Positions 11,886 to 54,406 of a stretch of DNA of 64,000 nucleotides are shown in pieces. How positions within the stretch are numbered: the first letter of the stretch is position 1; each line of letters begins with the position of its first letter. The notes under the pieces were generated by a model, which was not told where the DNA came from, searched no databases, and was given only the letters and a program-made list of their open reading frames with translations. Origin of the DNA: Lytechinus pictus (Eukaryota); the NCBI RefSeq assembly GCF_037042905.1, contig NC_087245.1:43152001-43216000 (forward strand), in the 5' to 3' direction. The position numbers were made by a program, and so were the translations under genes.

Positions 11886-11960
11886 TATCATAAATGTGAA
11901 GTACTAAACATTTAAGCTTATTATTCATTTCTTTTCAAATATTTGTTTCTCCACAAACAG

Positions 11961-14217: not shown

Positions 14218-14345
14218 ACTAACAGTGATTCAAATTTATGGTACACAGAACACAGTATGGATGTCAAAGCCTCATTGAAGGATACATGTATATTGAACAT
14301 TATTTTCTTTTGATATTCTCTCATATATATTGCCTTGTCCCATAG

Positions 14346-15640: not shown

Positions 15641-15938
15641 TGTAATCCACGAGAGGAAAAACACTGACTTCAGCCATGTGTACTGTGTCTTGGTAAAAAA
15701 ATTTGAACCAAATCAGGTCTATGCCATCATCGAAGGAAAGGTGGTTGAAACTAAAACTATCACTGATGCAGTTGATCTGTGCTTTAAAGCTTGTTATGCC
15801 TACAATCTGGAATATCAGGCGCAATGCTCAGCAACTTGGGAATTTCTTCAGAACATTGTATATGAAATGCCCGGACAGGTAAACTGTCCTATAATCAGAG
15901 ATTTCAGGGCATTCCAGAAAACTCTTAAAGACCAATAG
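15641..15938 (+). pseudogene. Orphaned terminal exon fragment of SAMD3-like gene A
   Basis: AVDLCFKACYAYNLEYQAQCSATWEFLQ aligns with AVDTCYKAVYVLDLEYQPQCCGAWEFLQ in 22816-23151. It is preceded by a copy of its own 3' UTR (15426-15640 ~ 15938-16160) rather than by the middle exons. Confidence 0.7.
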
Positions 15939-17105
15939 GCATTCAACAGTTTTTCATATATTTTTTGGTTGTTGTTTATATTCAAAATGTACTAATGTAC
16001 CTTGTTCAACAGGCTTTTTAAAAGTTTAGCCTTAAGAGATTCAGTATTTCTTTTTTTATAACTCAATTTTGATCATTGCCATTTATAGAGCATACATGTA
16101 AGTTGTTCAAGAATGCATGTTCTTTGAAGACATTACAGGGGGAAAACTACATTGATATCAAGTTTTTTGTTCTTTTGATCTTAATTGTGAACTCTTATTA
16201 CCATTACCATGTGTAAACTGAATAAGTGTTATATATATATATATGTGGTGTAACATGCCCGTAAATGGTTCATGGCCTTCTAGTTTTAGAGAGCTCTGTG
16301 TGAAGTAATTACAATGGAGGAACCTTTATAAATTTAATAGTCATATTCTATTGTAATGACTTGTTGATTTGATTAATATGCCAGAAAGATACAATGGTAG
16401 ATTTTTCCGCACCCGTTTTGCCCCCCAAAAGGTTAAAAACTGTCCAGTATTCATTGTGAACTCAATTATTAATATTACAAAGTTTTAATTTTAATACTTC
16501 AAGTTGAAAGCTCACTCAAGATGTCATTCCACTGATTGTTAGAACCTATCATTAATGTGTTTTTAATTTTAATCACTGTTACTTTGGAGTGTTATTGCCA
16601 AGAAATCATGGCTCTTGTAAGACTTAAACAATATGTAGATAGATGTATATTTCAAATGGGTGCTACATACTGTACATCCATTTGTTTTACTAATATTAGT
16701 TCCTAGGATGGAGAAAAAAACAATGTCCTGAAGTATCGCCGGTTAAAAGAAAGCGTAAGCCTATAGAAAGAAAAACCCACTTTTACTCCTTATGCAGATT
16801 AGCATTGTTCCATATGTGTCCATTGCTACTGACATGTTGTGAAAATTTTGAAAACACTTGCCTTCCTTTAAAAGTTTCTAACATTTGAATGGAATGTTTC
16901 AAGTTTTAAAAAAAAATTAGAGAAGATAAAATTACTATAATTTGAAATTGTTAAAATTGTTAAAAACTGATACACACTATAGAAAAAATAATCACGAGTA
17001 GTCATTAAAGTTTATTTTGATAATTTTGTATATGAGCCATGTAATTCTCGAAAATTTTCATGCATTTGCAACTTATGTGTTTTTATTTTTATTTTTGTGG
17101 TTTAG

Positions 17106-23100: not shown

Positions 23101-23151
23101 TTCAGAATCTTCGAGACAGCCTATGAGTCAATAATGAATACCAACATCTAA
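17106..23151 (+). CDS. SAMD3-like accessory gene of element B, seven in-frame exons (412 aa, no own 5' exons)
   Basis: Exons 17106-17248, 18474-18561, 19610-19805, 20161-20342, 20761-20935, 21877-21995 and 22816-23151. All are AG/GT bounded with compatible phases; total 1239 nt with no internal stop. Motifs LAKAILVSFPSLKD..GY, MRDTALYRQQWI, IEQDF, YVLDLEY..WEFLQ. Confidence 0.8.
17330..18062 (+). mobile_element. Degenerate Helentron/DINE-like element(s) in an intron
   Basis: (GGCG)n/(GGTC)n/(GTCC)n microsatellites, GGTCAAAGGTCA core motifs, 3' end ...CCATCTAGT. Boundaries are approximate. Confidence 0.45.
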
Positions 23152-23886
23152 CTGTCCTCATGTGAGCTAGCAAGTTTATTGCCTTTCCAGATACTTTTGC
23201 TTAAGAGAAGTTCCTGTGTTGATAAATGTTTTGTTAAACTTTCTCTTTTTTTTTTTGGAGGGGGGGGGCGGTTAATTGACAAAGTGAATGTCAAACTGTA
23301 GACTGTTTAGTCGACACGTTATCTGATATCTGAAGCCAGTTTGCAGCCCGCATTCAATAACTATACTTTGTTTCGCTTCAACTTCAGTAGTGATGACACT
23401 GTTTTGTAGTGTACGCAATGCTTTACGCACCTGCAAAGTTTCACAGTGATCCTGGGCCGAGATCTCGGGGGGGGGGGGCACTTGATGCCCCCCCCAAAAA
23501 AAAAATAACGTAGTCTTTTTAGGGTTAAGTCAGAAAGTTGTTTGTTGTATGAAGTAAGGTCTTAATTATTATATTTTGTTAAGTTGTTTTCTTCAACTGC
23601 TTTTGTTTTTTAATTGACAAAGTAAATGTCAAACTGTAGACTGTTCAAACCTGACTTATTAAATGTCAACTTGTAGACTGTTTAACCCTTTTCCTTTGGG
23701 GGCAGCGGGGGGGTCAATTTGGCCCCCCTCCCTCAACAATCTGCGTGATAACTCCACAATGCGCATGGGGAGGGGTGGCACTTGATGCCCCCCCAAAAAA
23801 AAAGTTTTCACAGGGCCCAAAATAACCTAGTCTTTTTAGGGTTAAGTCAGAAAGTTTTTAGTTGTATGAAGTATGGTCTTAATTAG

Positions 23887-25949
23887 TAATTTAATATTTT
23901 GTTAAGTTGTTTTCTTCCAATGAACTTTTGCTCTAAAGAAGTTCCTATGTTGAGTGATGTCAACATTTTTTTAAACTGCTTTTGTTTTTTAATTGACAAA
24001 GTAAATGTCAAACTGTAGACTGTTCAAACCTGACTTAGTAAATGTCAACTTGTAGACTGTTTAACCCTATTCCAATGGGGGCGGGTCAATTTGGCCCCCT
24101 CCCTCAACGATTCACGTGATAACTCCACAATGCGCAGTGATCTCTGCAAGCATAATTGAATTGAAGTATGATTATGCTAAAATCAAGTCATTTCAGCCAT
24201 TTGAATTTTAAAAGTGAATTTTTATATTGATTTATTGAAACATAGAAATATTGCATTGAATTTGTACCCAAAATCATGTTTTTTAGTCATTTTTTGACTT
24301 GATGAAAAGTTTTCAAAGGATCGTGGCCTTAAATCTGTATGTGCAGTCACGATAAATTTGGTGTTGACACTGTTGAAAGTTGTGCGATACTTGTTAAAAA
24401 AAAATTCATGAAGCTTGTGCCAAGACCACTATGCATTATGGAGATATTGTGTGAATCGTTGAGGGGGAGGGGGTCATCAAATAGACCCCCACCCCCCCCC
24501 CCCCCCCAGTTGGTTAAGGCCTGATCTGGGTGGTGAACTTATAAAGGCAGTTAAATTGTATGTAAACTAGAGTAGAAATGCACCTGTATGTGATATAATT
24601 ATTATGTGTATATTTCAAAACACTTCTCTCATTTCCATCATCTATAATGATTGTTTGTTTGCCCTAATTATCGTTAATAATTAAATGACCTGATATTTTC
24701 AATAGGTGTTTTATACTTGACTCATTAGCTTGTCACCAAAAAGAGAATTCCAAAGTGTAGGGTGCCTGCATTTTTCCAATAGTTCGGATGTAGAAGCAAT
24801 AACATGCCATATAGCCAGGGGAGGCGCCAGGGTGTTTTGGTAGGAGAGGCGAATTTTCCAGGGGGGGGGGGGTGACATCATAATATTTTTTGAAAATTGA
24901 ACAACAGGGGTAAAATCAGGGTAAAATGGCTTAAAAATGATTAAAAACGCTATTTTTACAATTATCTACCCTTCACCCTTTCTTTTTCTTCCTCTTTTTC
25001 TTCTTTTCTCTTAATTTTTTTTCTTTTTTTTTCCTACTCAAAATATTGCAACCGCATCTTTCAGCAATTTACATGGGAGGCCTACTAGTTTTTTCAAAAC
25101 ATGACTTAAAGTACATATATAATTTTTTTCCACCATTTTATATTCCTTGTTGTTGTTTTTATAGAATCATCCTAATTATTTGTAAATATTGTAATTAATA
25201 GTTATTTTTTCTAATCCCTTATAATTATTTGTATAAATAATTCATGTAATTTTGTTTCTAAATAAACATATAAATATAAAAAAAGTTGTTACATGTATAT
25301 AATGATCGATGTGTTCTTGTCTGTGTCATTATAATATTACAATATATGTTCTTTTTTTACATGATTTTCTGTATAATTGTTTTATTTTGTAAAATATACC
25401 AAACTATTATTTAAGAATTTACATTTCAGCAAGGTAAAAACTTTACATAACTGCTGTGTATTTTTTTAAATGAATCATTTTGGTGTAAATTTTACTTCTG
25501 TATTCTGTACCCTTTACTCTGCTAGTACATGGAGAACCTATTGGGTGAACACAATAACAGAGTAAAGGGTACAGAATACTGAAGAAAAATTACAACAAAA
25601 TGATGCATTAAAAAAAATTAGTCAGCAAGTATGTAAAATTTTTACCTAGCTGAAATCTAATTCTTACATAATAGTTTGGTATATTTTACAAAATAGGGGT
25701 TAGGTAAAACTTTACACAATTGTTGTGGAGTTCTATACGTACATCGCAGATGTGTATTTTTTACAAAATGAAAAAATTACACAGCAATTATGTAAAAAAT
25801 TTACTTTGCAGAAATGTAAATTCTTACATAATAGTTTTGTATATTTTACAAAATAGGGGTTAGGTAAAATTTCACACAATTGTTGTGGAGTTCTATACGT
25901 ACATCACAGTTGTGTAAAATTTAACACAACTTGTGTAAAATTTTCTGTG
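23887..25949 (+). mobile_element. 3' part and right end of CACTA family B (copy 2)
   Basis: Direct, near-identical repeat of 1-2059. Follows the B gene stop and ends TTTTCTGTG. Confidence 0.85.
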
Positions 25950-27339
25950 TGTGTACAATGGTAGATTTTTCCGCACCCTTTTTGCCCCCCAAAAAGGTTA
26001 AAAACTGTCCAGTATTCATTGTGAACTCAATTATTAATATTGCAAAGTTTTAATTTTAATGCTTCAAGTTGAAAGCTCACTCAAGATGTCATTCCACTGA
26101 TTGTTAGAACCTTTCATTAATGTGTTTTTAATTTTAATCACTGTTAATTTGGAGTGTTATTGCCAAGAAATCATGGCTCTTGTAAGACTTTTAAACAATC
26201 CCTGTTTAGAAAGGGTTTGTTATTTTTACTTTAGTTGTTATTTTTATAATTTTTGTTGTTTTATTGTTTTTATTCAAAAGGTACTAGTCAACCTTTTTCA
26301 AACAGCTTTTAAAAGATTTAGCCTTAAGAGATTAAGTATTTATTTTTTATAACTCAATTTTGATCATTGCCATTTATAGAGCAAACATGTAAGTTGTTCA
26401 ATAATGCATGTTCTTTGAAGACATTACAGGGGGAAAACTACATTGATATCAATTTTTTGATTCTTTTGATCCTAATTGTAGTTGTGAACTCTTATTACCA
26501 TTACCATGTGTAAACTGAATAAGTGTTATATATTATGGTGTAACATGCCAGTAAATGGTTCATGGGCTTCTAGTTTTAGAGAGCTCTGTGTGAAGTAATT
26601 ACAATGGAGGAACCTTTATAAATTCAATCGTCATATTCCTTGTAATGACTTGTTGATTTGATTAATATGCCAGAAAGATACAATGGGAGCTTGTTCCGCA
26701 CCTGATTTACCAAAAATGAGTTAAAAACCATTCAGTATTCATTGTGAACTCAACTTAATTATTAGTATTTCAAAGTTTTTTCTTAAATTGTAAGATTGCT
26801 TAAAGTTCATATCACTCTTAAGACATCATGTCAAGTCTTTTAGATTAAAATGGGAGAACATCCGATTGCATTTTATGTGTAGCATAAACGTAATGCAATG
26901 ACGATGCAATGACACATTGCTGCCTATATAGGTTAAAATTGTCTTCAGTTCAGGCTGCAATGGTAAGATATGCCAAGAATCCATCTCTGTCTATTGAGAC
27001 CATAGCCTTAAAATGTAATTGATACCAATGTTAAGAATGAAAGCACTTTTGTCAATCATTTTATAAAGGCATAGAGAAACCAGATTTCCAAAAGTTATCA
27101 ACAGTGTGTAAGGGTCTTCAATAAAGAGGACATTTCTCATGATATTTTAATTTTCAAATATGCAATGTAGAGAAGAGGTAATGAACATATTGCAGCTTTC
27201 TTATTTTACCTTTAAAAAAGTTCAATGGAAGTTGGTTAATTGATTTTAAGAAATTAATTTCTTTTCTATCTGATGTTTTATTGTCAAGGGATGTTATTTC
27301 TTAAAATAAACACCAAATAATATACATGGTTTCTTTGCA

Positions 27340-27857
27340 TGTTCACATAGTCAAATGTTGTCACTCCAGTCTTACATTTGGAAGGTAGTAATACACTAAA
27401 TATTTAGCTAAAATGTTTGGGGAAATATCTTGACAGAAACAATTATATTTTTTTTTCAAAGGCAGTTTGACTACTTATTACACCTGTATCAATTTATGTC
27501 ACAATGGTAATGAATTTTTCATGGTAATTTATAATGTCAACTAAAATATTTTAAGCCTCGGGTATGTAGGTTGGTTTTGGAAATAGAAAACGAATTTGCA
27601 TATAACACTTTATGATTTGTAATGTACAATTTAATGTTTGGTAAGATTTACACCAAAGATGAAGTGCTGATAACACTACATTTACACATTATATATAAAT
27701 TCTATTTTGGGGTAAAATTTACCAAAAAGTTATCAAAAGATTGTACATAATATTTATCAAAACATTTTTCATAATTTTTGTAAAACATTTTACAGGAATT
27801 GGGTTTAATTTTACATCATGATTTACATAATATTTGTGAAATGTCTCCTCTCTCAGT
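27340..27857 (+). mobile_element. Candidate subterminal array and degenerate right end of element A
   Basis: Dense TTTACA/GTAAA motifs ending CTCCTCTCTCAGT (rc ACTGAGAGAGG, lacking the terminal C). An unrelated coding sequence follows abruptly. 25954-26760 continues element A 3' repeats. Confidence 0.45.
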
Positions 27858-30611
27858 TTCTCAACAGAGTGGACAATGTTTCACGTCCGAGACATGGATG
27901 CCATGAACTGAAGAGGAAAGCTGACAATGCTGCTGAAGCTGACAGTGCTGGCTCAACAAACCAAAAGCGAGATTCGTATGGATGTCTTAATTGGCAACCA
28001 CTATCGCTACCAGAGGGGGAGACCGAGGAGTCACAAATGACAATCAAAGAGGAACTAAAGGAGCTTCATAAATCAGAACCTCATGTCGATAGAAGAGAAG
28101 TTGAATAAAAAAAGGCAAATACCTATGCCTCGCAACGTATTTCTTTGAACAAACCTGATTGTGCACTGCTGGATGTTGTTGAAGAATGGCCGTATCTGTT
28201 CGATGAGACGATTCTCCTTCTGCACTTCAAACAACTTGTAGGTATGGATGCGAAAGAAAAAATCACAGAAGGGTTGGAAAAGAAATCTGCCAAGATGTAT
28301 CGCTTCTTCAGACAATCTAGGTCCTTTGGGAACGTGCAAGATAAGCGCATTCATCAAGTACTGAATTCAGTGGATGAAGCTGTCCTGATGATGAGATGTG
28401 AATCCTCGAAAGTCATGGGGTTGGTCTACCTGGTGTCAGCATACGTAGGCGAAGAAGTACAACACTACATCTACCAACAGGTAATCCTATGATGTATGTT
28501 ATTAAGGAGTTTGGGTAATCAAGTTTAGTGTCTATAATTGTTTCCAAATTATATGTGAATTTTAAATGAAAATTAAAACTCATTTTCCATTGTCATTGAA
28601 ATTGACTTGAACAAAATTTTAGAGTAGTGTTTCCAGAAAGACTTTTCACAAGAATGAGACCAATTGCCATTATAAATGGTACAATCTTCTGAAAATCTTA
28701 TTCTATAGTATAAATCTTGCATGACCAGTTGCAATGTATTAAAACGATGCAAGTGTTGATTAAAATATTGATATTTATGATGATCATCATAACCTTATTA
28801 GGCATGCTATCAGTATACTGCAGCAATAAAGGAAATAACATACCTAGCGAAAAAGTTTACCCTATCAAAATACCGCTGATTTTGATTTTCCAAGATACAG
28901 GAAGCATTATGTGTTTATACATGTACCACTGCCAATGAGAAATGTTGTCATGGGAAATCCCATGGCAGGCTTCTTTGATGCACATTTTGTTGCAAGAGAC
29001 TCGATTACTGACAGTATAAAACCATTGCAGGATTTGCCTTCCGTGTACATTTGTATTTTCTTATCATTATATAAGACATTGCACTACATTACATTACATT
29101 TATTATGTTACACTTCTGTCTCGGGTGTTGTGTCTGTTTCCATGTCAGGATTTGGGGCAACCACAGCAAACAAAGAACCAGCTGCCTGGACATCCATGCT
29201 TGATTTCCAAAGGTAAAAATGTTTATTTTTTACTCTCCTGAATAGGATAATGTGCCTTGCCTAAGGGCACTACTGCTGCAGCCAGTGTACTCGAACCCGG
29301 GACCTCAAGGCTGAGCGTCTGTGGTCTTACCCACTGAGCCACAACAGCTCCTGAATAACATATTTTTTGTAATACCTAAATTACTTAAATTACCTAAATT
29401 TTTCCTTCAAGTTTCAAGAATTTTCATAGAAAAATTGAAACTGTTGGTGATCCAAACATATTTATTATTGCTCTGTTTAGTGGTAATCCAATGATTTCAG
29501 TAATTTCCTGATTGAAATTTCTTGGATTCTGAAAATTCTGGGACAAATAACCAATGGTTAATTACTTCCTCTACAATTCCTGCCCCCCCCCCCCCCAAAC
29601 AAAAAGAGAGAAACAAATAAAATGAATTATTGAAAATAAAAATATGAATAATAGATTTAAAAAGACAAATACCATTAAAATTCATAGAAAATAACTTTTA
29701 CAAACAGATTTCTTTTGAAGCTTATTGTCATTGACATTCTGTTTAACTGCAGTAATTTTATTAGTATGTGTTTGTTTTCTTGTTTTATTTTGTGACAAGG
29801 AGATCCACTGGAGAGCACAAGGTTTTCACTTGCTGTCGGGGGCATAGTGACAACACATGTAGAGAACCCCATCAGCGCTCTTGCAGTTTGGTTTGCTGCC
29901 TTCTATGTATTCAACTTGCAGTATCCTAAAGAAGCGTATGGGGTACCAGAGTTTATTCAGAGGTAAGAGGTAGTGTTGTGTCTGAGACCATCAGTTCTGA
30001 GTCTAATGGAAAATGTCACGTTCTCAATGGTTTTGTACTCGGGATTTGGGTTGAGTCCGAGGCCATCAATTTTGCACTCGAATTCAAGAGACAAGGACAA
30101 GAGTCTGTAAAGAACTGATACTAAAAAGAAACCTAGCAGTAACTCGAAAGCAATTCTAAATTTTAATTTTGCAGATTTTCCAACAGCTCTATGGTCTGTT
30201 AAGAGATAATACAGCTATAACATTGTCTCGGTATGGGACAAAAAGTTATTTCCAAATGTGGGGCACCCTTTGTAGGATTTGGAGTCAATGTGGGAACTAG
30301 CATTAATAATGAGGAAAGTTCTTGCCTTTGTACAAACCTAAATGTTTCAAGACAAAATGATAACATGGTAATCTTGGTGGTTTCTGCTGTTTACCTAACC
30401 ATCCGTATCGAAAATATATTCAGTTGAGAGCCAGAAGGGCGTTTACACTATTTTATCTCTATCTATCTCAAATTCCCTTTTTTTCAGGTGCTTCCTGGGC
30501 ATCAACCCACAAACAGGATCAAAGGGAGGAAAGAGGAAGATGCATCCAGGAGTACTGAAATTAGCAAATCGTCTTGTGTCCTTTGAAAACGAGTGGGCAC
30601 TTAACGAATAA
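27858..30611 (+). pseudogene. 3' exons of SAMD3-like gene of element C
   Basis: Exons ~27858-28480 (stop/frameshift near 28108; DSYGCLNWQP, EEWPYLF), 29149-29212, 29800-29962 (FAAFYVFNLQYP..EFIQR) and 30488-30611 (CFLGINP..GSK). Phases are compatible. Confidence 0.75.
29245..29347 (-). mobile_element. tRNA-derived SINE 5' fragment
   Basis: Minus strand has box A TGGCTCAGTGG and box B GGTTCGAGTAC, then GTGCCCTTAGGCAAGGCAC. Flanked by the direct repeat CTCCTGAATA (29235-29244, 29348-29357). Confidence 0.7.
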
Positions 30612-32063
30612 TAGCACAACCCATCTTGAACCCCCCCCCCCCGGACTTCAGTGGCAGTACGATTGAAGCATCCGTCCTCTTTCGTCGTAATGTAAGATCC
30701 ACGGGTACAAATGCAGAATGAAACTTTCATTTTCGTCTGTATCCTATTTGCATGTATGTACAGTTAATGGTAATGTCACCCAGTGAAAGGATCAATCCGG
30801 ACCAATTATAAGTTGATGATCCAGAACTTACTCAGCAGGCATATTCAAATTACAGTGTTTGTTTTTTTGCAGTAGCAATAAGAGTTTATGTACTGTTGCT
30901 GAAGAAAAAAGGAAACGCACCTTGCAGAAAAAAACTATCCAACAGGATTATTCACAACGGTTGTTCTTGAATTATGGTATTAAAAACAAGTGGACTTGGT
31001 AAACATGCATACATTGCTTTACAATTTGCATTTTTTACATAAAAAATAAGAATATCTGATAACATGATTGCTTGTTTGTTTAACGAATCAGTGAAGGAAA
31101 GAGGATAACGTAATATATATAATTTTTAAATTAATCAGCAAAATAATGATTAGGGTAATACAGCCCATTAGTCCTATACAGCACAGTGGACATACAGACT
31201 GAGTTGAGATTGCTCGATATTACTTTTTCTTGTGCATGTAAGTCTCCTTTCAAGCTACTTCCAAGTTCTCTTTTTTATTGCAATGTTATCGTAGTCTCCA
31301 TTCAAAGCTGTAGGATCAATAAGCTGTCTCTGATTAGAATTTGTTTTTTACTATAGTATTTAAACAAACTGGACTCTGTACTGTTATTATACACATGCGA
31401 TTTGTATGTGTGCATGATAAGAATCTCATGATTAAAAAAATTGACTAAATATATACATGCATACATTGGTTTACAATTTGAATGTTTGCATCATAATTAT
31501 GCCTGATATCATGATTGTTTGTTTACCAAATCAGCAAAATTAAGATTAGATTTACAGCCCTCTAATTCTACAGCCTAGTGGTGATAAAGTTGATTGTTTT
31601 GTTTGATATTACAATTTGTTGTGCGTGTTAGCCTCTTTTCAAGCTATTTCAAAATGTTAATGCAATGTTATGGTAGTCTCCATCCAAAGCTGTACGATCA
31701 ATAAGTTATCTGTAACATTGTGTTTGTACTGTAGTATGAAAACAAACATGACTCAGTCATGTTATTACACACATGCAATTAGTAATTGCATCATAAGAAT
31801 ATGTTATCTCATGTTTGTTTACCAAATCAGCTTGTAAAAGAGAAAAAAAACATACTCTTTTGTTTGGGATTACTCATAAGAAAGCTGATTCTTAGTTCTT
31901 GTACTGTAGCATTAAAACTGAATGGAATCTGGCCTGCTATAATGTTATGTATATGTTTTCATTATAAGAAAATCTCAATTTCATGTTTATTTGCCACATC
32001 AATGTGGAGAAGAGAAAAACTTCAATTTTTGTTTGGGATAACTGATTACCTCTCAGCAAGATG

Positions 32064-32148
32064 ATATCTTCTGTTTAGAACCAGAAGGGCGTTAACTCAT
32101 ATACTTTAACACAGAGTCAACGCCCTTCTGGCTCCAAACAGATGATAT
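32064..32148. repeat. Short hairpin / mini-MITE
   Basis: ~35-bp arms (CCAGAAGGGCGTTAACTC / GAGTCAACGCCCTTCTGG). A half copy lies at ~30413-30443. Confidence 0.6.
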
Positions 32149-33099
32149 TTTATCTTTCTGCATATGCAGTTTGCATAATGATTGAAGTCGATGATTAGGA
32201 GCAGGAATTTCCTATAAAGAAACAACCTTTTTTTATTGGTTCCATTTTTTTCTTATATTAATGTTTAAAAACGTTTCAGTTGTGTTGTGTTTGAGAATTC
32301 AAGTGTTTACAGTCCTTTCTCTGCCATATCCATGCTGGACGTCATTGTTGCAAATTACTTATTCTATGCTCTAAATCATTATTTTAAATTTTGTATGTGA
32401 CTACATGATTTTTATATTGTGATGGTTTCTTCCTTCAGGATGTTTCCTTTTTTAATTATCAAAAATGATTAGGCAGAGGACAGAAAGGAAGAAAAAAAAA
32501 ATCATCTGACACTAAGAGATCAGTTTATTATGCAGGGCAGATGTCAGATAAGTCACTTATTTCAGCCTCAATTATTATTTTGTTTTAGCTTTATTTATGA
32601 AACTGCTGGTCAGATTGAGCCAACCTTGCTTGCCTGTAATGTCTTGTTTCATCTTTTCATGATAACTTTGTTCTCTTTTTAATGTTTTCATCATAAAAAG
32701 CAATTTGAAGAAAATATTCCAATATATCTTTTTTCGTTTGATGAATAGTTTAAATTATATTGTGAAACCTCATTATGATGAACACTTAGTGCTTTTTGAT
32801 ATCACCTTATCACTTTCAATATCTTGTTATATCAGAAGTACAAAAAAAGTGAAGAAGAAGAGTTTAGACCACAAAGATCATCTTTTTGTATCAGGTACGT
32901 CATTACAGAGCTCATTATTTCGAGGTTCCACCTTTTATTTTTTTTCTAGGATGTATGATATACTACATGTAGTATGAAAATGTCAGTGACCCCTTGTGAA
33001 TATCAATAATTGATATTGTTCATGTGTACAACAGTTCAACTCTTCTTGATTTTCAGTGTACTCTTTGAACAAATCATACATTACTCCAGTTACATCACC

Positions 33100-34004
33100 C
33101 TCCTGTATGAGATTACAACAATATTTTATTTGCCGTTTAATTTACAGGACAGGTATTTTACATGAACAAAATTATTATGACAAATACCAACAATGCCTGT
33201 AAACTAACAGTGATCTGTTTCACAGGAAGCTGTTCAAGTAGTGAAACAGGGTTAAGTACATGCAATTTGTAAATTTACAGTATGTAAAATCTGGAAACCC
33301 GATTAAGCAGCACAGTTCCTGTAATAGAATAGGTTACTGTTATTTTACAAGAAAATACAACATAAAAATTACAGGAAATCCCTGTACAATTACAATATAT
33401 AAAACCAGCAATATCATAATAATACGGGGCCAACTGTTATATTACGAGAATATATTACATGAAAAATACAGAAAGTTTCTGTAAAATAACAGGTTCTAAA
33501 CATGAATCCGTACATGTAATTTTACGTGAGGCTGTAAAATAACGGGCATTCGTGGCGTTATGACTGCCAGGAAACTTCCAGTAATACAACAGGGTAACTG
33601 TTATTAAACAAATATATATGAAACTAAAAATAGGCATTGTTTGTTAAATAACAATAAACAAAGTATTAAAATCTGGTATTTAAACAGGAGAGTTCCTGTG
33701 ATAAAATGGGGTTGCTGTTAATTTACAAGAATATATGACATGAAAATTACAGAAAGTCCCCGTAAAATTACAGTATATAAAACCAGGAACATGATATTTT
33801 AGCAGGAAATCGCGTAAACAAAATGGGGTTTACTGTAATTTTACGAGAATGTATGACATGAAAAAATACATTAAGTTTCTGTTAAATAACAGTTTTTTAA
33901 ACACGAATCTGTTATTTTACGTGAGGCTGTAAAAAAACGGGCACTCCTGGCGTCCCGACTGCCAGGAAATTTCCCGTAAAAATACGGCAATATTTTTTAC
34001 AGTG
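33100..34004 (+). mobile_element. Subterminal repeats and right TIR of CACTA element C
   Basis: Array of (C)TGTAAAATAAC/TTTTACA motifs ending TATTTTTTACAGTG (rc CACTGTAAAAAATA, a typical animal EnSpm terminus). Confidence 0.85.
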
Positions 34005-34129
34005 TGTGTCTGTGTGTCCATACTTCAAAGATCTGTTGTAAATGAGGTAATTGCTAAACACGAAATGACTTATTTGTATAAACCTGGCCCTAAATTGGCT
34101 CCATCATTGTTTTCTTTTACTAAAATTAG

Positions 34130-34422
34130 GGTGAAGACACCATGGATCCAAATGTCTGCATTCTGACAGATGGTGAATCCCCCCTTGACTCAACCCAGTT
34201 CATCATAACTGTCGAAAAGTGTTCAGTGTGCACAGTTGGCGACATTATCACTGCATGTGCATGTTACTTGGCATGCTTCTACGTGTTCCACCTGCAGTAC
34301 ACACCAAATGTGCAGAAGACTTTGACATTTTTCCAAGTGCTACTAATGAACATCAAGGACAAATGTCCAGTGGACAAAGTGTGTTGCACCTTATCTTACG
34401 ACTGAACAGGGTAACAAAGTAA
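34130..34422 (+). pseudogene. Terminal exon of SAMD3-like gene of element D
   Basis: TAG acceptor; YLACFYVFHLQYTPNVQKTLTFFQ; frameshift near 34380. Confidence 0.7.
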
Positions 34423-36639
34423 ATCATGGAAGACAATGAGTCCACCATGGTCAAAACTGCACTAATTTTGGAAAATCAAGTAACTAATTTCCTAGACTCA
34501 TGTAGCAGCGATCACTGCTGTAGCACAGATCTCTCTCGTTGGCGGCGCTTTTTCGGGTTTACAGCTCTGGGTGACGGAGTTCAGTTCGCGAGAGTGTAAT
34601 CTAGACTTTCCAGAACTCTGCTAACCCTCTTCAATTTTGAGGGAGTTATGTGTGCTGCTTATACAGAAAAATGCTTCCACACCTTCATTGTGGACTAAGA
34701 GGAAAGATTAGGGGTCGTAATTTATTTTTATTTTTTTTTACTTGTTTGAAAATGCTGTATTCCTTGACATTTTGACTATGGGTGTAGGAATGTGTTTTGT
34801 CCCATAAAGGTTGTAATGGGATATTACATGCTGATTGTGTCAGATATTGTTGGAGAGATTTATCAATGCTTCTTATTGATGTAACATATTTACTAAATAT
34901 TACATTGTTCAAAGGTATTGATGTGTAGATGCTGTGTTTCATGGCATTATTAAAACATATATTGGAAGCTTGCATTTAACATGGATATTCTTGTAATGTG
35001 ATTGTATGTGCTAAACAGTATCTCTTATAGTTTTGGAGAGATTTAAGTTTCTTGTGCATTCTGATGAGTTCTTAATGATGTAACCTTTGCATAATACATA
35101 TGACATTGTTCAAAGGAGTTGCTGTGTAGATGTTGTGTTTCATGCCAGTAATACAATGTCTCACACATGCTAACTGAATAGGTTTATAAAATAATATTGA
35201 ATGCTATGTACAGCACATTGCATGAATGTATACCGGTGTATATATAGTATCAATTGGAGTAAACTATTGGCCAGATTTTGAGAAGGTATTTTGCACTTCC
35301 ATTTTTTCATGCTAAATAGTTTTCAAGGTTTTTTTTTCTTGTGTTTTCACAGGAATATACAGTATCTGACACATGACGTTAAATACCTGCAGTTGCTTTC
35401 AGACATGCGCATGTTCTATAACTGTATAAAGATACAGTATTTAAATGGATGGTTATTCTAGCTGCTGATTTGTTGCCGAATTCAGAATATACAAAATATG
35501 TTTATGTATATGTAGAATAAAAATAATCACAAAATGATTCAGCCATAAGATTTAAATGATCTGAGCCCATATTATTAAAAATTCATTAGCTTGTACAGGA
35601 TTTGGATCTAGTGGATGATTACATGGTGTAGTATTGAATTGTGTTTACCCTTACAGGTATTTATTTTTATCATGAATTAAGACATATGTTACTGATTTAT
35701 TTTGTATCTGCAGTCGTCTGCAGTCCCACATGTTCTATGTAATATATTGTAAGATACAGCATGCGAAGTGAATGTTATCCTGCTGAGGACTTGTTGCTGA
35801 ATACAGAGTCTAACAAATTTCCATTGTGCTTTGACAACGCATGATGTAAATTCACAATAATCAGGATTGTTTCAAAATTATTCAGCAGAAATATAAAATG
35901 AGATTTTAGCCCATATTTGTTACAATTAAATTTACATTTTCTTTGAATATGGATTTATGATAAGCAATTTATTAGATTGGCAACAGTTTCATATTGGAAA
36001 TTGTTAGTTATTTTATTTAAAATTCATAAAAATGTTAATTTTGTGTAATGCAATATCTCAGTTTAAGGAGTACAATACATGTATCAATGCACACAATGTA
36101 GCAAATTAGGATTTTATGATTCCTCCTGACACTACAGTATCATTGCTGTCTTCAGCAGTTGACTATGAAGATGAAATGTTAAAGATTTTTTTAAATTGGG
36201 CCTAATTTGAATACTTTGCAAATAACTCTTTAAAAGAGTAAAATATTAAAAATGATGGTATTAATGTATGCTGCAATTGGTCTGATGTCCAGGATTGCAG
36301 TTACATCAATCGTACATTTGCACTGAAAGGTTGTTAATAGTATGTTTAAACATGTTTAAACATAATTGTTACAGATGTTGTCCTCAGTTTGTCAGTTTGT
36401 ATTCAACAATGTTATTTAAATTCATGTATTTGAATATTGACAGTTTTGCTCTGTTTTTAAATCAGCTCACCTGATAATAAAGAATTTGCTGATATTATTT
36501 CTGATTTCCTGTATGAATTGATTGGTGTGTCAAATCATTATTTTCACTGTGTAAATCAAATAACCTTACTGTAACCGTTTGTTTATGTAACTGTTTGTTT
36601 ATGTATACATGCACAATTTTTTTTTTGGGGGGGGTGCAA

Positions 36640-36968
36640 ATAACTGCATGACAAATTGTATTTCAGGCATTAAAAATTTATTCCTTTGCATGACAAAGCA
36701 ATTTTCATGCTTGACAAATTAATTTGTGTGCAATACAAATTAAATTCTTTGCATGACAAACGACAAACTGAAATTTGTCAAATAAGACCACTTTCCACGA
36801 CAAATCAAAATTTGTCATGTACTACATAAAAATTTGTCAAATAGACCCCTTTTCACGACAAATTAAAATTTGTCATGAAAAATTATTCGACGAGTTATTA
36901 GTTTGTCAAATAAGACCACCTACGTGACAAATTTTAATTTGTCAATTGACTAAACAATAATTTCAGTG
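36640..36968 (+). mobile_element. Subterminal repeats and right TIR of CACTA element D
   Basis: Dense TGACAAA/TTTGTCA array ending AATAATTTCAGTG (rc CACTGAAATTATT). Confidence 0.75.
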
Positions 36969-37213
36969 TTGATTCTTGCAAACTGGTATCATGAGAATCA
37001 AGGCTGAAGGCAGGAAGCTATTCATTAGTTTTGAGCAAAATTACAGCTCAGAAATTCAGTCCCTTGTTCTAAAGATAGTGACAAATAATATTGCGGTGGT
37101 AACGCGGTGGTATAATCAATGTTAGATTCCAACTTACAGAATACAAGCTTCTGTTTTGAATTAAAAACATGGTGCATTTTTTTATTTATTGACATTTTTT
37201 AATCTGATTCCAG

Positions 37214-38155
37214 AAATTGCCATACAGATCCTACCAACCTTCTTCAAGGAAGACCTAGGTGATATATTAATCTCAAGTGACAAGGTATGGTAACCGCATA
37301 ACCAGTTAGAAGTAATTTTACAACATTGACATGGACTAGATTATAAGTTTCATAAAGCCAAAACCTAAGAATCATATTTTAGCATTCTTTTGCACTCCGC
37401 TCTACAACTTCAGACTGCTGAGCCAACTGGTGGGTTGTGTTTATCACAAAGTACACTGGAATTATGTGATCAGGTACTTAAGATTTACATGCATGCTATG
37501 TGTGATAACACAACATTCCAGTCAGCCCACCAGCATGCAGTTGCAAATTACAGCACCAAACAAAGCTGAATATATTCTGAGTGGTGGAATTTTGTTAGTT
37601 TTGCATTTCATCAGAGTGATTTATTTGCCAAAAATATTGTTACATCTTATTAATGTTATTTGAATAATTATTGAAAGAGAAATATTTCAATCCAAGTAGG
37701 GTGAAAAATATTGTGCGTTGCTTGGTCGTCATGCTGCATGTCGCGCGTTTGCAAGACACGCTGTTAACGGGCTATTTAGCATGCATCAGTCACATGATTA
37801 CGCACCATAATCTAAAGAAATCAATCTTATCGTTTTTTATAAAACTCCGCCCGCCCATCCATTGTCCCATAATGGATGGGCCAAGTTTCTAAAAAAACAA
37901 ACAACATATTTCTTGTTGAGAAGCTAAACCACATGCATTGAATAAGAAACCCTTCTTGTTATTGTTTTTCATTGACAGGTTGATACGAAGCCCATGTACA
38001 TACGTGTATCCGACAATCAAGAGGATTCATACGAGCTTGTTCTGGAGGAGCAAAGAGTCTGTCAAGTCCAGGATAAATTGCATGCATTGGCTTGTTACGT
38101 AGCTGGTTTTTACATTTTTCATTTGGGCTATGAGCCATCAGTCATGAAAATTTGA
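37214..38155 (+). pseudogene. Last exons of SAMD3-like gene of element E
   Basis: Exon 37214-37284 (IAIQILPTFFKEDL) and exon 37979-38155 (YELVLEEQRVC..ALACYVAGFYIFHLGY then early stop). Not in the ORF track. Confidence 0.6.
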
Positions 38156-39392
38156 ATATATTGTGAGGTAGCCTCACCAACTGCATCAGGATTATCTCAT
38201 ATCAACCTGTACTGGTTCAAGAACTGCCTTGTTTATTTATTGCAACAGCTGAATGCAAAATTGTTTTTGAAAATATGCTTGTAAAAAAAAAGAGAAAATA
38301 GTATTGTGAACAAGTCAAACAAAAGGACAATATTTTAAAACTTGATTGGCCATTAGTTTTGGTCTCGACGTAAATGTTTTTTCTACAAAGTGCAGTAGTT
38401 GTACATACCTGCCAACTATTCAGATTTTTGAGCTTTCAAAGTAAAAATTCTGGATAGTTCAGATTTTTGAAAATCTTCATGATGGTTAATTCAATCATAA
38501 AGTTCAAAGATTTTATATATAAATTAATTGGAAAAAATCTCCATCTTTTCAATTTGATGATTTTAGACTATCAATGTTGGCAGTTATGGACTGGCATTGT
38601 GTATAGCTAAAACGTTTTGCTCTCTAAATGTGAAATGGTAAGTGGGCTCTCACTTTCTTGAGTAAATCATGGAAAAAAGTGAGAGCCAACTTTCAAGAAA
38701 GGAATAACAATTCCAAAAACAGTAAATACAGTTCCAAAAAGACTGAAACACTAAAAAGGAATTTTCATTCTTTAATGGCTTTGGATCAGGGAATTTTCTT
38801 TTTTTTTAAGTTGTCCAACATTTTATTGTGCTTTTGGAATGATTTTCAACTTTTAATGGAAAGTATTTTGATTCGTCAGGTTTGTAATAAATCATCAAAT
38901 TTGTTGTTTTTGTTTGACAAAAATGAATTGGTTTTGTCAAACAAAAACAACAAATTTGATATTGTTATTGAATTTGATGCAATTGTTGCATGGTACTGGT
39001 AACTGAATTTGATGTCAGGAAGTTAAACATTGCTGCTCTTAATGCCAGGGGCATATGCAGGTTTTTTTTTTTGGGGGGGGGGGTGGAGAAATTTTGGAAA
39101 TTGGACCTTTGCAAATATTTTCCCGAAATATACCACATGTATTTTTAATCATCGACCAAAAACAGCTGATAAGGGGGGAGGGGCGGCAATTTGACAACCC
39201 AATTTTTTTCAAACGTAAAAAAGGGCGATTGGTTAACGCGTACACACAAAAGTAGACCTTTAGCATTTTGCGAACGCACACCCCGCACCCCCTGCAATGC
39301 ATATGCCCCAGGTTTATGCAAAGTATTTTGACATTTTTAGTGAGTTTGATGTAGGCCCTAATTGTTCTAACTGAATTTGTTGCAATTGTTAA

Positions 39393-39996
39393 AGGTCAAG
39401 TCCACCCCAACAAAATGTTGATTTGAATCAATAGAGAAAAATCAGACAAGCACAATGTTGAAAATTTCATTAAAATCGGATGTAAAATAAAAAAGTTATG
39501 ACATTTCAAAGTTTTCGCTTATTTTTAACAAAATAGTTATATGAACGAGCCAGTTACATCCAAATTAGAGAGTCGATGATGTCACTCACTCACTATTTCT
39601 TTTGTTTTTTATTGTTTGAATTATACAATATTTCAATTTTTACGAATTTAAGGATTAGGACCTCCTTGCCTGAACCACAAAATGTTAAAATAATGGAATT
39701 CCACGTATTCAGGGAGGAATGAAACTTCATTTCACATGACAATGACGAGAAAATCTAAATATTTCATAATTCATATAATAAAATACAAAAGAAATAGTGA
39801 GTGAGTGATGTCATCAGTTCCCTCATTTGCATACCGACCGGGATGTGCGTATAACTCTTTTGTGAAATGAAGCGAAACCTTAAAATGTCATAACTTTCTT
39901 ATTTTACAGTCGATTTTGATGAAATTTTCAGTGTTATGCTTGTTGAATTTTTCTCTTTTTATTCGAATCAAGTATTTGTTGGGGTGGACTTGTCCT
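39393..39996. mobile_element. Kolobok-like MITE
   Basis: TTAA|AGGTCAAGTCCACCCCAAC ... GTTGGGGTGGACTTGTCCT|TTAA with an intact TTAA duplication. Confidence 0.85.
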
Positions 39997-40068
39997 TTAA
40001 CCAGTAGTGGTAACTGAAAAGAATTTGTTGTCAGGATGAAGATTGCCTGTTGCTCTTAAGAATATATC

Positions 40069-40650
40069 GAGGAGTTTTAGCTAATCTCCTTTGCAGCCTG
40101 CGTAACACTCATACTGTGACAGCAGGAGTCTCAATCAGACTGCGAAGGAGATTAGCTAAAACTCCTCTATATTTACTTTAATGCAGAATATTTTGACATT
40201 GCTAGATAATTTAATGTAGGCCCTAATTGTTGTAACTGAATTTGTTGCAATTGTTATACAGTAGTGGTAACTAATACAAAGAATCTGTTGTCGGGATGAA
40301 GATTGTTTGTTGCTCTTAAGGGTATATAGGAGTTTTAGTTTATCTCCTTTGCAGCCTGCTTGACAATCATACTGTGACAGCAGGAGTCTCAATCAGACTG
40401 CGAAGGAGATTAGCTAAAACTTCTCTATATCCTTAATGCAGAAAATTTTGACATTGTAGTGAATTTGATGTAGGCTAGGTTTGTAACTGAATTTGTTGCA
40501 ATGGTTATTACTTGTAATTGAAAAGAATTTGTTGTCAGGGTGAAGATTGTTTGTTGCTCTTTGAGGAGTTTTAGCTAATCTCCTTCGCAGTCTGCTTGAC
40601 ACTCATACTGTGATGGCAGAATTCTCAATCAGACTGCAAAAAAAATTAGC
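40069..40650. repeat. Three tandem ~250-bp units, each containing a ~100-bp hairpin
   Basis: GAGGAGTTTTAGCTAATCTCCTTTGCAGCCTG ... CAGACTGCGAAGGAGATTAGCTAAAACTCCTC at 40069-40167, repeated at ~40328 and ~40563. Confidence 0.75.
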
Positions 40651-40849
40651 ATCCTTAATGCAGAGTAATTTGACATTGCAGTGAATTTTAGTAAATATTT
40701 TATTAAATGTTACTTGCTGGCAAGTGTTGACTGGATCTGATGTGTTTTGAATTTGTTTCCTCAGGAATTTCGAGTTTCTATTAAAACTTACAAAAATATT
40801 AATTATCTGTATTTGTTTGTTTATTACAGGTGGGTGTTCTGACTATTAA

Positions 40850-41111
40850 ATGACAAATTAACGTCAAAATGCATTACAAATTGGTGAATGAAAAAAAAAC
40901 AAATTGAAAAATGCGAATGAGGAATTAAAATGTTGCAATGACAAACTTTGAAAAAGGTTTGTCAAATTGGACCACTTTTCATGACAAATTGAAATTCGTC
41001 ATGTTATGGTGCATAACAAATCTTTGGCATGACAAATTTATTAATTTGATAAATTAAACCACATGAATGACAAATTTATATTTGTCAATTGACAAAGTTA
41101 TCTTTTAAGTG
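40850..41111 (+). mobile_element. Subterminal repeats and right TIR of CACTA element E
   Basis: TGACAAA/TTTGTCA array ending GTTATCTTTTAAGTG (rc CACTTAAAAGATAAC). The next base enters a different transposase. Confidence 0.7.
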
Positions 41112-41674
41112 TATTTGTGCGGGGAGCACAATGTCCCCGTGAGGGAATGCATAGACATCATATCAGATGACCATAAGCATGACATCCATGCGGTCCATAC
41201 CTTCCTGGAGAGAGCTCGCCAGCATCTCCAGAAAGACAGCAGACACTTCATCAGAGAAATCCAATTCTCTGACGGATGCGCTGCCCAGTATAGATGCAAG
41301 AGCGCTTTATCGGACATCTGCGATAGTAACAAGATCGAGAGGCACTATCTAGGGGGCAGACACGGGAAAGGACCATGTGATGGCGAGGGAGGGGTCTTGA
41401 TATCTCTATGTGACCGTGCAGTAAAGAGTGGCAAACCATCATCAGGAATGGTAAGGAAATGGCAATGTACCTTGTGCAAATTCACCAAAAGGGACCCCGT
41501 GATCACAACGATGAATGCCAGCATTCAAGGGGGCGTGTGATCTACGTGAGTAGTCAGGAAATTGACAGAAAAAGACATGATGCTAAAGTACTCAAGACCG
41601 TCCAAGGCACGTTGAAAATTCACGTAGCCAAAGGAGTCGAGCCAGGGACTATCCAAACACGCAAAAACATGTAG
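41112..41674 (+). pseudogene. DDD/E transposase fragment, Sola2-like
   Basis: ISDDHKHD..AV, FSDGCAAQYRCK and HGKGPCDGEGG, then after a frameshift LKTVQGTLKIH. The 5' part is missing at the element E end. Confidence 0.65.
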
Positions 41675-41914
41675 AAAGGCCAAAGAATCAAAAGATTTTT
41701 GCTACAAGGCGGAAAATAAATATTCCAACCGCACGAAACGAGAGAGAACAGTCAGCAGAGATACAGATCAACGAATTTGCAGAAGAGACCATGAGAGAAA
41801 TAACAGAACAAGAAGACCTCGTTGAACTGACGGCAGAATCGGTTATGACAGAACTAGAGGGGACGAAAGAAGAAGGGATGGGGATCATACAAGAGAGTGG
41901 ACTGGAAGAAAGAG

Positions 41915-42560
41915 ACAAGGAAGTCCAAGAAACAGAGACAAAGATAGAAGAAGACATGGAGAAGACGATTGAAGAAGATATCGAAATAGAGAATAATGAG
42001 AGAACACAAGATACAAGGTCGGAAGGAGAAAGAGAGAAAGGAGTCCAAGAGACCCAAGAGATTGAGATGACGATTGAAGGAGGAGACATCGAAATAGAGA
42101 ACGAGGGAACACGCGATAGAAGGTCGGAAGGAGAAGGAGAGAAAGGAGTCCAAGAGACCCAAGAGATGGAGATGACGATTGAAGGAGGAGACATCGAAGT
42201 AGAGAGCAACGAGAGAGCACAAGATAGAAGGTCGGAAGGAGAAAGAAAGGAGTCCAAGAGACCGAAGAGATGGAGATGACGATTGAAGGAGACATCGAAG
42301 TAGAGAACAACGAGAGAACACACGATAGAAGGTCGGAAGGAGAAGGAGAGAAAGGAGTCCAAGAGACCCAAGAGATGGAGATGGCGATTGAAGGAGGAGA
42401 CATCGAAGTAGAGAATGAGAGAACACAAGATAGAAGGTCGGAAGGAGAAAGGAGTCCAAGAGACCCAAGAGATGGAGATGACGATTGAAGGAGGAGACAT
42501 CGAAGTAGAGAACATCGAGATAACACAAGATAGAAGATCGTAAGGAGAGAAAGGAGACCA
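41915..42560 (+). repeat. ~105-bp purine-rich tandem repeat (~6 units) encoding a Glu-rich 35-aa unit
   Basis: GAGTCCAAGAGAC anchors at 42041, 42146, 42250, 42355 and 42452. Peptide GVQETQEMEMTIEGGDIEVENERTQDRRSEGE. Confidence 0.9.
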
Positions 42561-43019
42561 GCATAGGAAATATTTGGGAGAGATGGGAATCAAGGAACCC
42601 GCAAAAGTACCAACAAGGGAATTATGTCGAAGTGACGTTTACAGCAAATCGCAAAGTCAAGACGTATGTCGAACTCGTGAGTTTGGAAAACGTCGCTTGG
42701 ACGCTAATTTCTTCATTGGATAACAATATTTCCATTTTACTTTGCTTCGTTTGTTTCCCTACAGATTTGCTTTGACTGCCTTTGAACCTCCGTTAATCAG
42801 TTAATAAGACATTTCGTTGTTGATGTTTTTAAAATGTATTTTTTTTTCTTTCATTAATGTCACACGTTTCTTTAATATATTTAATATAAGTTTAGATTTA
42901 TGCTTTGTCTTCTTTTCCTTGATAAAAATAAAGTTATTTGAGTAATTAACTTTTTAATATCTCCTTATTGTATATTTTCTGATCAGTCTACTTTTTATTT
43001 TAACTGAGAATAATCAAAG

Positions 43020-43280
43020 TGTTTGAATACACTCTAAATTTAAAAGACTTAAATTATAAAACTTAGGAGGGACTTGAAATAATTCAAGTCTCATGGACTT
43101 ATTTTAACACAAGCTACGGTAAATCCTAGGACACTTATGAAATTCAAGTCTTTGAAGACTTATTTCGCTAGCTACGATTTGTATATTTTGACAAACCGCC
43201 AAAATGTTAAACCTTTCGAAAGACTTAAACTTTGAACCAATCAGGTTATGAGGATGCGCATGCACGTGACACAGAACCTC
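43020..43280 (+). mobile_element. Candidate right end of the Sola2-like element
   Basis: AAGACTT/TTCAAGTC subterminal motifs, then GTGACACAGAACCTC (rc GAGGTTCTGTGTCAC, a GRG-type terminus). Confidence 0.4.

Positions 43281-54375: not shown

Positions 54376-54406
<31 letters not shown>

What the first reader, a model, noticed from the sequence alone, without database searches (positions are those of the whole stretch)
25940..43280. Russian-doll stack: five consecutive CACTA right ends, each dropping into the interior of a different element
Seen: right termini at 25949 (B), ~27857 (A, candidate), 34004 (C), 36968 (D) and 41111 (E), with no intervening left end recognised. Immediately after each, sequence resumes inside another element: A 3' region, C exon, D last intron, E gene, Sola2-like transposase. 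Inference: these are closing brackets of a nest at least five deep, implying strong insertion or retention preference of CACTA elements for other transposons. This predicts left halves upstream of the window in mirror order.
Basis: partly seen in the sequence, partly recalled or inferred. Interest (0 to 1): 0.75.

Follow-up and report, generated by a model that had tools for sequence, protein, structure and literature searches.

The report
Stacked right ends of dead transposons
In a transposon-crowded stretch of sea-urchin DNA, four (perhaps five) dead cut-and-paste transposons survive only as their right-hand parts, laid end to end in the same direction. This looks like jumping genes landing inside one another, a well-known pattern, but the matching left halves could not be checked.

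Summary
Four of the five claimed right ends are real transposon termini. Each ends in ...GTG, has its own subterminal repeats, and lies 2.6-4.0 kb after a plus-strand last exon of a SAMD3-like gene.

The fifth end (A, ~27857) is doubtful. CTCCTCTCTCAG|TTT reads as the splice acceptor of C's exon. Any A terminus more likely lies at about 27839-27845.

After each end the sequence does resume inside another element:
- C starts at an exon start.
- D starts 125 nt before its last exon.
- E starts 245 nt before its second-to-last exon.
- After E, a transposase-like reading frame is open from the first base. I could not confirm it as Sola2.

Serial nested insertion remains the simplest origin, but a clean mirror-image nest is not what the window shows. 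B, the supposed innermost element, is itself cut short on the left at 16633 and abuts an A-family 3' region. No left ends of B, C, D or E occur in the 26 kb upstream.

All elements point the same way and every entry point lies in the host's 3' part, so rivals stay open. The upstream contig could not be reached. Verdict: an ordinary kind of transposon graveyard, of moderate-to-low interest.

The parts
1..2063 (+). B1: right-hand 2 kb of a second B copy, ending ...TTTTCTGTGTGTG, followed by unrelated sequence.
   Evidence: 99% identical to 23887-25954 over 2071 bp. The flanks differ after the terminus.
6344..16632 (+). A': an A-family element with exon 1 at 6806, transposase remnants at 12584-13697 and its last exon at 15641-15938. 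Its 3' region is traceable to 16632.
   Evidence: It is uninterrupted across the point where B sits in the downstream A copy.
16633..25953 (+). B2: a 5'-truncated B copy of 9.3 kb. It has SAMD3-like exons at 17106-17249, 18472-18561, 19610-19807 and from 20154 on, and its last exon at 22879-23136. Its right terminus is at 25953.
   Evidence: The exons are collinear with profile positions 146-331 and 429-501. There is no transposase and no left TIR. The terminus is defined by the B1/B2 comparison.
25954..26199 (+). A1: a piece of A-family 3' region that starts exactly at B's end.
   Evidence: 96.7% identical to 16391-16632.
26200..27856 (+). A2 plus tail: an older or more diverged A-family 3' region, followed by 1 kb of unassigned AT-rich sequence. 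Any A terminus lies somewhere in 27839-27857, and its position is unresolved.
   Evidence: 26241-26779 is 87% identical to 15951-16486. No subterminal motif is enriched. X1 contigs break at 27844/45. ...ATATTTGTG ends at 27839.
27857..34004 (+). C: the 3' 6.1 kb of a CACTA-like element. An exon starts at 27857 behind a pyrimidine-tract AG. The coding region covers roughly the second half of the SAMD3-like protein and carries one in-frame stop at 28106-28108. The last exon is at 29781-30029 and the subterminal repeats run about 33150-34004. The terminus is ...ACAGTG.
34005..36968 (+). D: the 3' 2.96 kb of a second element. It starts in the last intron, 125 nt before the last exon (34130-34402). 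It has TTTGTCA subterminal repeats and the terminus ...TTTCAGTG.
   Evidence: gene structure of relative P0004. A related element in another genome, probably complete, has the same motif at both ends.
36969..41111 (+). E: the 3' 4.1 kb of a sister family of D. It starts 245 nt before its second-to-last exon (from 37214, with the ILPTFFKED motif). The last exon is at 37955-38206 and is decayed. It has TTTGTCA subterminal repeats and the terminus ...TTTAAGTG.
41112..43029 (+). The 3' part of another transposon. A transposase-like reading frame is open from the first base after E (41112-41671). A 105-bp coding tandem repeat follows (41951-42548), then an AT-rich tail.
43030..43407 (+). H: the left end of a further CACTA-like element, CACTCTAAATTT, with AAGACTT subterminal repeats and a first exon (43347-43407, MMENFLKENGLDGTVLETLK). 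The exon was read as SAM-like by eye only.

Best explanation
This is a dead transposon graveyard. It was built mainly by serial insertion of CACTA-like, SAMD3-like-gene-carrying cut-and-paste elements into the 3' parts of earlier residents. The proposed order is: E into the transposase exon of an unrelated element, D into an intron of E, C into the last intron of D, an A-family copy into or next to C just before an exon, and B into the 3' region of that A copy. Each right-end junction is a transposase-made integration junction. This is inferred from the complete ...GTG termini. Afterwards at least one deletion or repair event reshaped the pile. It removed the left part of B and fused B's intron to another A-family copy at 16632|16633. 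The region is transcriptionally near-silent and has no function of its own. The junctions and truncations are shown directly. The order of events and the existence of left halves further upstream are inferred.
For: - Termini are complete to the last base and family-specific subterminal arrays stop exactly at them.
- Each host resumes in a recognisable interior position of the conserved last-exon architecture.
- An uninterrupted A copy shows that B's site is a simple interruption of A.
- B1 and B2 are 99% alike, so B moved recently and locally.
- Other transposon-in-transposon insertions occur in the same elements: a TTAA-flanked MITE in E, and a 12-bp-TIR element with ATT/ATT flanks in A's 5' arm.
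- A D/E-like element in another genome has TTTGTCA arrays and a CACTCTTA TIR at both ends. D/E-type right ends are therefore ends of ordinary two-ended elements.
- Nests of up to 8 layers are documented in wheat (PMC4290129).
- Only 3-4 RNA reads per run were laid on 24600-30400.
Against: - No left half of B, C, D or E lies in the 26 kb upstream.
- The innermost element B is not complete.
- All stack members have the same orientation.
- All entry points lie within the last 2-6 kb of hosts. Earlier notes give the full size of such elements as 15-25 kb; I did not check this. That position bias is unlikely for random nesting, roughly 1 in 1000 by my own estimate, although the locus was picked after the fact.
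- TSDs could not be examined.
- The A/C junction is not located.
Confidence: 0.55

Rival explanations
1. Deletions by alternative (reversed-ends) transposition. The elements once lay side by side in the same orientation. The right end of one and the facing left end of its neighbour were cut together and inserted into the neighbour's interior. This deleted the neighbour's left part and fused a precise right terminus to interior sequence. Repeated along the array, it gives a stack of right ends with no left halves anywhere.
For: - It explains the uniform orientation and the precise termini without requiring left halves.
- D and E have closely related ends, so one transposase could plausibly act on both.
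- Several copies of the same families sit within 64 kb, which is the setting such events need.
- The mechanism is documented for maize Ac/fAc (PMC1592236, PMC3744419).
Against: - B, C and D/E have different TIRs and subterminal motifs, so cross-recognition at most junctions is unlikely.
- It does not explain the interior-to-interior junction at 16632|16633.
- It has never been shown for animal CACTA-like elements.
Confidence: 0.17
2. Aborted double-strand-break repair. A break, for example after a transposon excision, was extended by copying from a paralogous locus where B already sat inside an A copy. Synthesis stopped inside B's intron and the end was joined without homology. At least the block 16633-26199 would then be a copied fragment. 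The whole stack could be a partial copy of a nest located elsewhere.
For: - The 5'-truncated B is flanked by a 242-bp direct duplication of A sequence.
- The two duplicate copies differ by 3.3%, while B1 and B2 differ by 1%. This fits a copy taken from a paralog.
Against: - It accounts for only one junction.
- The same picture arises from two neighbouring A copies plus a plain deletion.
- No donor locus was seen.
Confidence: 0.1
3. The uniform orientation is the real signal. The region is a one-strand transposon trap, either a flamenco-like piRNA cluster or a long intron of a minus-strand host gene. Only insertions in one orientation persist there, and nesting and truncation are by-products.
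For: Eleven of 12 strand-assignable transposon genes or fragments in the 64 kb are on the plus strand. No recognisable coding was found on the minus strand.
Against: - No small-RNA data were available.
- Total-RNA reads are almost absent.
- No host exons were seen.
- Several of the 12 elements are copies of one another, so they are not independent.
Confidence: 0.1
4. Assembly artefact: collapsed or chimeric joins between repeats.
For: The region is repeat-rich. Only the stretch 24600-30400 could be laid against reads, and the best-matching run may be the sample the assembly came from.
Against: - The joins fall exactly at the termini of different families, not inside shared repeats.
- X1 contigs run through 26868-28660 with normal 30-nt overlaps.
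Confidence: 0.03

Closest known systems
Nested transposon clusters in plant genomes (maize intergenic nests; wheat chromosome 3B, up to 8 layers, PMC4290129)
   Same: Younger elements sit inside older ones. Hosts are split and termini are precise. The result is a dense transposon island.
   Different: Here only the right halves are visible, all elements point the same way, and every entry point is in the host's 3' part. The elements are animal CACTA-like transposons with a spliced SAMD3-like gene, not LTR retrotransposons or plant CACTAs.
Fractured Ac (fAc) and nested deletions from alternative transposition in maize (PMC1592236, PMC3744419)
   Same: An intact transposon terminus is fused to sequence that was formerly distant, and one side is lost. 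The partners are in direct orientation.
   Different: Those cases involve two ends of one family served by one transposase. Here at least four families with different ends are involved.
flamenco-type one-strand piRNA clusters of Drosophila (from general knowledge, not tested here)
   Same: A graveyard of truncated, nested transposon fragments, almost all in one orientation.
   Different: No piRNA or precursor-transcript evidence is available here. It is not known whether sea urchins have such clusters of this type.

Membership tests
CACTA/EnSpm-type cut-and-paste transposon | Termini 5'-CACT(A/G)...(C/T)AGTG-3' | tested here: met
   C and D end in CAGTG and E ends in AAGTG. B ends in TGTGTG (a CACACA-type terminus), so B does not meet this feature.
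CACTA/EnSpm-type cut-and-paste transposon | Arrays of short subterminal repeats next to the termini | tested here: met
   Family-specific arrays lie within about 300-850 bp of the ends of B, C, D and E and are absent elsewhere. They are not seen at the claimed A end.
CACTA/EnSpm-type cut-and-paste transposon | 3-bp target-site duplication | not testable with these tools
   No left ends of these copies are in the window. In the related element on L002 the flanks are GTT and TAG, so no duplication is seen.
CACTA/EnSpm-type cut-and-paste transposon | EnSpm-type DDE transposase | tested here: inconclusive
   The stack fragments carry no transposase. The window's two transposase remnants (12584-13697, 60962-62448) match the 716-aa product of the gene called next to a SAMD3-like gene on L001. 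They have no Pfam hit.
Nested (Russian-doll) insertion | Both halves of each host flank the insert and rejoin across a short duplication | not testable with these tools
The protein searches found no proteins of this genome. Within the window no left halves of B, C, D or E exist.
Nested (Russian-doll) insertion | The innermost element is complete | tested here: not met
   B2 lacks its left TIR, the N-terminal exons of its SAMD3-like gene and its transposase. It begins in an intron at about 16633.
Nested (Russian-doll) insertion | The host is uninterrupted at the same point in another copy | tested here: met
   Shown only for B in A. A' reads ...CCAGAAAGATACAATGGTAG... straight across the site.
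Sola2 transposon (the sequence after E) | Sola2-type DDE transposase | tested here: inconclusive
   The 143-aa frame 41109-41537 has no significant Pfam match, and the word search found no relatives.
One-strand piRNA cluster | Strand-biased transposon fragments plus strand-biased piRNAs | tested here: inconclusive
   The strand bias is 11 of 12. No small-RNA data were available and total RNA is nearly absent.

The most novel reading that the evidence does not exclude
These animal CACTA-like elements may home directionally. They would insert in the same orientation, a few to a few hundred nucleotides upstream of an exon in the 3' part of a resident relative's SAMD3-like gene. A possible cause is tethering by a transposase or accessory protein bound to the host's subterminal arrays. 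Alternatively, the locus may be a one-strand transposon trap that supplies piRNAs.
Probability: 0.12. Interest if true: 0.6.

Novelty: new member of a known kind. Interest (0 to 1): 0.3.

Why it matters
If the pile is a plain nest it adds little. Nested transposon islands are textbook in plants and in heterochromatin. The locus mainly gives a relative age order for five families of an animal transposon type only recently recognised in this scan (CACTA-like with a SAMD3-like gene). It would matter more if the uniform orientation and the 3'-proximal, pre-exon entry points recur genome-wide. That would point to directed self-targeting, to end-pair deletions by alternative transposition in an animal, or to a one-strand transposon trap.

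Tried and rejected
- **Left ends in the window.** I searched for the left TIRs of B, C, D, E and A with up to 3 mismatches and with 14-mers, and found none.
- **Possible A' right end.** CTAATCAGTG at 49795-49804 matches A's left-side CACTGATTAG. I rejected it because the flanks are CAA and TAG, there is no subterminal context, and the CACTG at 6339 belongs to the TIR of the inserted 3767-6343 element.
- **16632/26199 as a true A-family terminus.** The endpoint is shared only because one of the two copies stops there, it does not end in GTG, and it has no TIR partner.
- **Reaching the upstream contig through gene models.** Word searches with D's exon, with a profile carrying B's exons and with the post-E frame found no proteins of this genome. 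Walking upstream was therefore impossible.
- **Other tools.** Earlier-findings look-ups gave no note on the upstream neighbour.
Full report
**What the window is.** Earlier notes of this scan place the window in the sea urchin Lytechinus pictus. They describe 15-25 kb CACTA-like transposons whose transposase sits in an intron of a spliced SAMD3-like gene. I did not re-derive the species. I did confirm the gene family. The D exon (34130-34402) matches the C-terminal ~90 residues of 500-590-aa proteins. One of these is named 'sterile alpha motif domain-containing protein 3-like' by NCBI. Another, P0004, lies directly after a 716-aa gene on its contig. That gene's product matches the window's two transposase remnants.

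**The four solid ends.**
- A self-comparison shows that window 1-2064 and 23887-25954 are 99% identical over 2071 bp and diverge at the same base. B therefore ends ...AAAATTTTCTGTGTGTG at 25953 (B2) and at 2063 (B1).
- C ends ...TTTTTTACAGTG at 34004, D ends ...AATTTCAGTG at 36968, and E ends ...CTTTTAAGTG at 41111.
- Each end is preceded by its own dense direct and inverted subterminal repeats.
- Binned by 500 bp, CGTAAAA clusters only at 33501-34000. TTTGTCA clusters only at 36501-37000 and 40501-41500.
- The last ~70 nt of D and E are clearly homologous, so they are sister families. C and B are different.
- A related element on a contig of another genome (L002) has TTTGTCA arrays at both ends and CACTCTTA... 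/ ...TAAGAGTG termini about 17.9 kb apart. These are therefore the ends of ordinary two-ended TIR elements.

**The shared architecture.**
- tblastn and a small profile of five full-length relatives place plus-strand last exons at 15645 (A'), 22879 (B), 29781 (C), 34130 (D), 37955 (E) and 55750 (F).
- The distance from last exon to right end is 2.8 kb for B, 4.0 kb for C, 2.6 kb for D and 2.9 kb for E.
- C keeps roughly the second half of the protein. One frame runs 27857-28489 with a single stop, and the last exon follows.
- D keeps only its last exon and starts 125 nt before that exon's acceptor. The exon boundary was judged from the seven-exon structure of P0004.
- E starts 245 nt before its second-to-last exon (ILPTFFKED motif, from 37214).
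- After E's terminal GTG a transposase-like frame is open from the first base and runs to 41671. It is followed by a 105-bp coding tandem repeat.

**The claimed A end.**
- At 27857 the sequence reads TGTCTCCTCTCTCAG|TTTCTCAAC. That is an 11-nt pyrimidine tract plus AG, immediately in front of the frame that matches SAMD3-like proteins.
- AG at 27855-27856 is the only AG between the upstream stop (27806-27808) and the start of the coding match.
- The expected terminal G is missing, and no motif is enriched in the last 500 bp.
- Contigs of run X1 overlap normally but break at 27844/27845. Depth is about 6 to the left and 3.4 to the right.
- A right end somewhere near here is still plausible. An A-family 3' region of 694 + 1657 nt would give about 2.35 kb from last exon to end, close to the other families. 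...ATATTTGTG at 27839 ends in GTG, but it has no left partner in the window.
- I therefore count this end as unlocated rather than absent.

**What lies between B and C.**
- 25954-26199 is 96.7% identical to 16391-16632.
- 26241-26779 is 87% identical to 15951-16486.
- Both reference stretches belong to the 3' region of A', an A-family element with exon 1 at 6806, transposase remnants at 12584-13697 and its last exon at 15641-15938.
- A' reads straight through the point where B sits in the downstream copy (...AGAAAGA|TAC|AATGG). B is thus a genuine interruption of an A-family sequence, possibly with a TAC duplication.
- The two A pieces overlap by 242 bp and differ by 3.3%, whereas B1 and B2 differ by 1%. 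A' and the downstream piece are therefore different copies, not two halves of one host.

**B is not a complete innermost doll.**
- Upstream of its last exon I read exons at 17106-17249, 18472-18561, 19610-19807 and from 20154 on. Joined, they align collinearly with profile positions 146-331. This match is weak: 9 bits, E = 2.9e-5 with a search space of one.
- The first ~145 profile positions, the transposase and the left TIR are missing.
- B2 therefore begins in an intron at or shortly after 16633, directly behind the A' 3' region. This is an interior-to-interior junction that no insertion can make. A deletion, an aborted repair copy or a similar rearrangement must have happened there.
- The same 26 kb upstream contains no left TIR and no left subterminal array of B, C, D or E.

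**Weighing the explanations.**
- For serial insertion: the complete ...GTG termini argue that a transposase made each right junction. Serial insertion is also the only mechanism that naturally brings five unrelated end types together. Nests up to eight layers deep are documented in wheat. I therefore keep 'nest plus later rearrangement' as the best explanation, at about 0.55.
- Against a random nest: B, the A piece, C, D, E and the post-E frame all point the same way. So do A', H, F and the transposase at 60962-62448, giving 11 of 12 assignable units and a two-sided binomial p of about 0.006 (my arithmetic, with some copies not independent). In addition, each host keeps only its last 2-6 kb.
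- One caveat on the position bias: a reader looking for closely spaced ends selects for it. The orientation bias is not affected by that selection.
- Alternative transposition that uses the right end of one element and the facing left end of a same-orientation neighbour would give precise right ends fused to a 5'-truncated neighbour, with no left halves anywhere. It is documented for maize Ac. It needs cross-recognition of ends, which is plausible only for D and E.
- Aborted gap repair from a paralogous B-in-A locus explains the 242-bp diverged duplication around B2, but little else.
- A one-strand trap (a piRNA cluster or the intron of a minus-strand gene) would explain the window-wide orientation. 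It is untested.
- Total-RNA reads on 24600-30400 were nearly nil.

**Limits.** No tool gave access to the rest of this genome, and the protein searches found no proteins of it. Only one stretch could be laid against reads, so the junctions at 34004, 36968 and 41111 rest on the assembly alone. They fall exactly at the termini of different families, which misassembly would not produce.

**Verdict.** This is a real stack of four right ends, perhaps five. It was most likely built by transposons landing in one another and was later reshaped. The kind of structure is known, and the locus is of moderate-to-low interest unless the orientation and position bias proves to be genome-wide.

Noticed in passing
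window 1-64000: Eleven of 12 strand-assignable transposon genes or fragments are on the plus strand: A', B1, B2, the A1/A2 piece, C, D, E, the post-E transposase frame, H, F and the transposase at 60962-62448. Only the inverted A 5' arm at 2399-3179 is on the minus strand. This suggests a one-strand transposon trap or an intron of a minus-strand gene.
   Followed up: partly
window 16391-16632 and 25954-26199; junction 16632|16633: A 242-bp direct duplication of A-family sequence (96.7% identical) brackets the 5'-truncated B2. The left junction joins an A 3' region to a B intron, so a deletion or an aborted repair copy occurred there.
   Followed up: partly
window 43030-43407: The left end of a further element (H) starts with CACTCTAAATTT and has AAGACTT/AAGTCTT subterminal repeats. 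A first exon at 43347-43407, read as SAM-like by eye only, follows. No matching right end is in the window.
   Followed up: partly
window 2399-3179 versus 3340-3766 plus 6344-6717: The 5' region of the A family forms a ~780-bp inverted repeat (90% identical) around a 160-bp loop. One arm is split by a 2.6-kb element with perfect 12-bp TIRs (CAGTGTTGTAGT...ACTACAACACTG, 3767-6343), AAGGCCAAGG subterminal repeats and ATT/ATT flanks.
   Followed up: partly
window 39393-39998 and 10693-11288: A ~600-bp palindromic MITE with GGTCAAGTCCACC... TIRs, TTAA-flanked in E, sits in E's 3' region. A relative lies in A's intron (89.7% identical, inverted).
   Followed up: no
window 41951-42548: A 105-bp tandem repeat of 5.8 copies encodes an acidic repeat (...EEMEMTIEGGDIEVEN...) downstream of the transposase-like frame.
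   Followed up: no
window 52857-56001: A compact SAMD3-like gene (F) has a zinc-finger-like N-terminal exon instead of a SAM start. It has weak C2H2/BED Pfam hits and matches P0065 residues 4-60. No transposase lies within it.
   Followed up: no
window 15430-16161: In A', the end of the last intron plus the first 31 nt of the last exon (15430-15640) is repeated just after the stop codon (15948-16161, 93% identical). The downstream A piece carries the same unit at 26241-26453.
   Followed up: partly
L002 7329-25249: A D/E-like element of about 17.9 kb lies on a contig of another genome (GCA_040938485.1). It has CACTCTTA termini and TTTGTCA arrays at both ends. Its flanks are GTT and TAG, so no obvious target-site duplication is seen.
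   Followed up: partly
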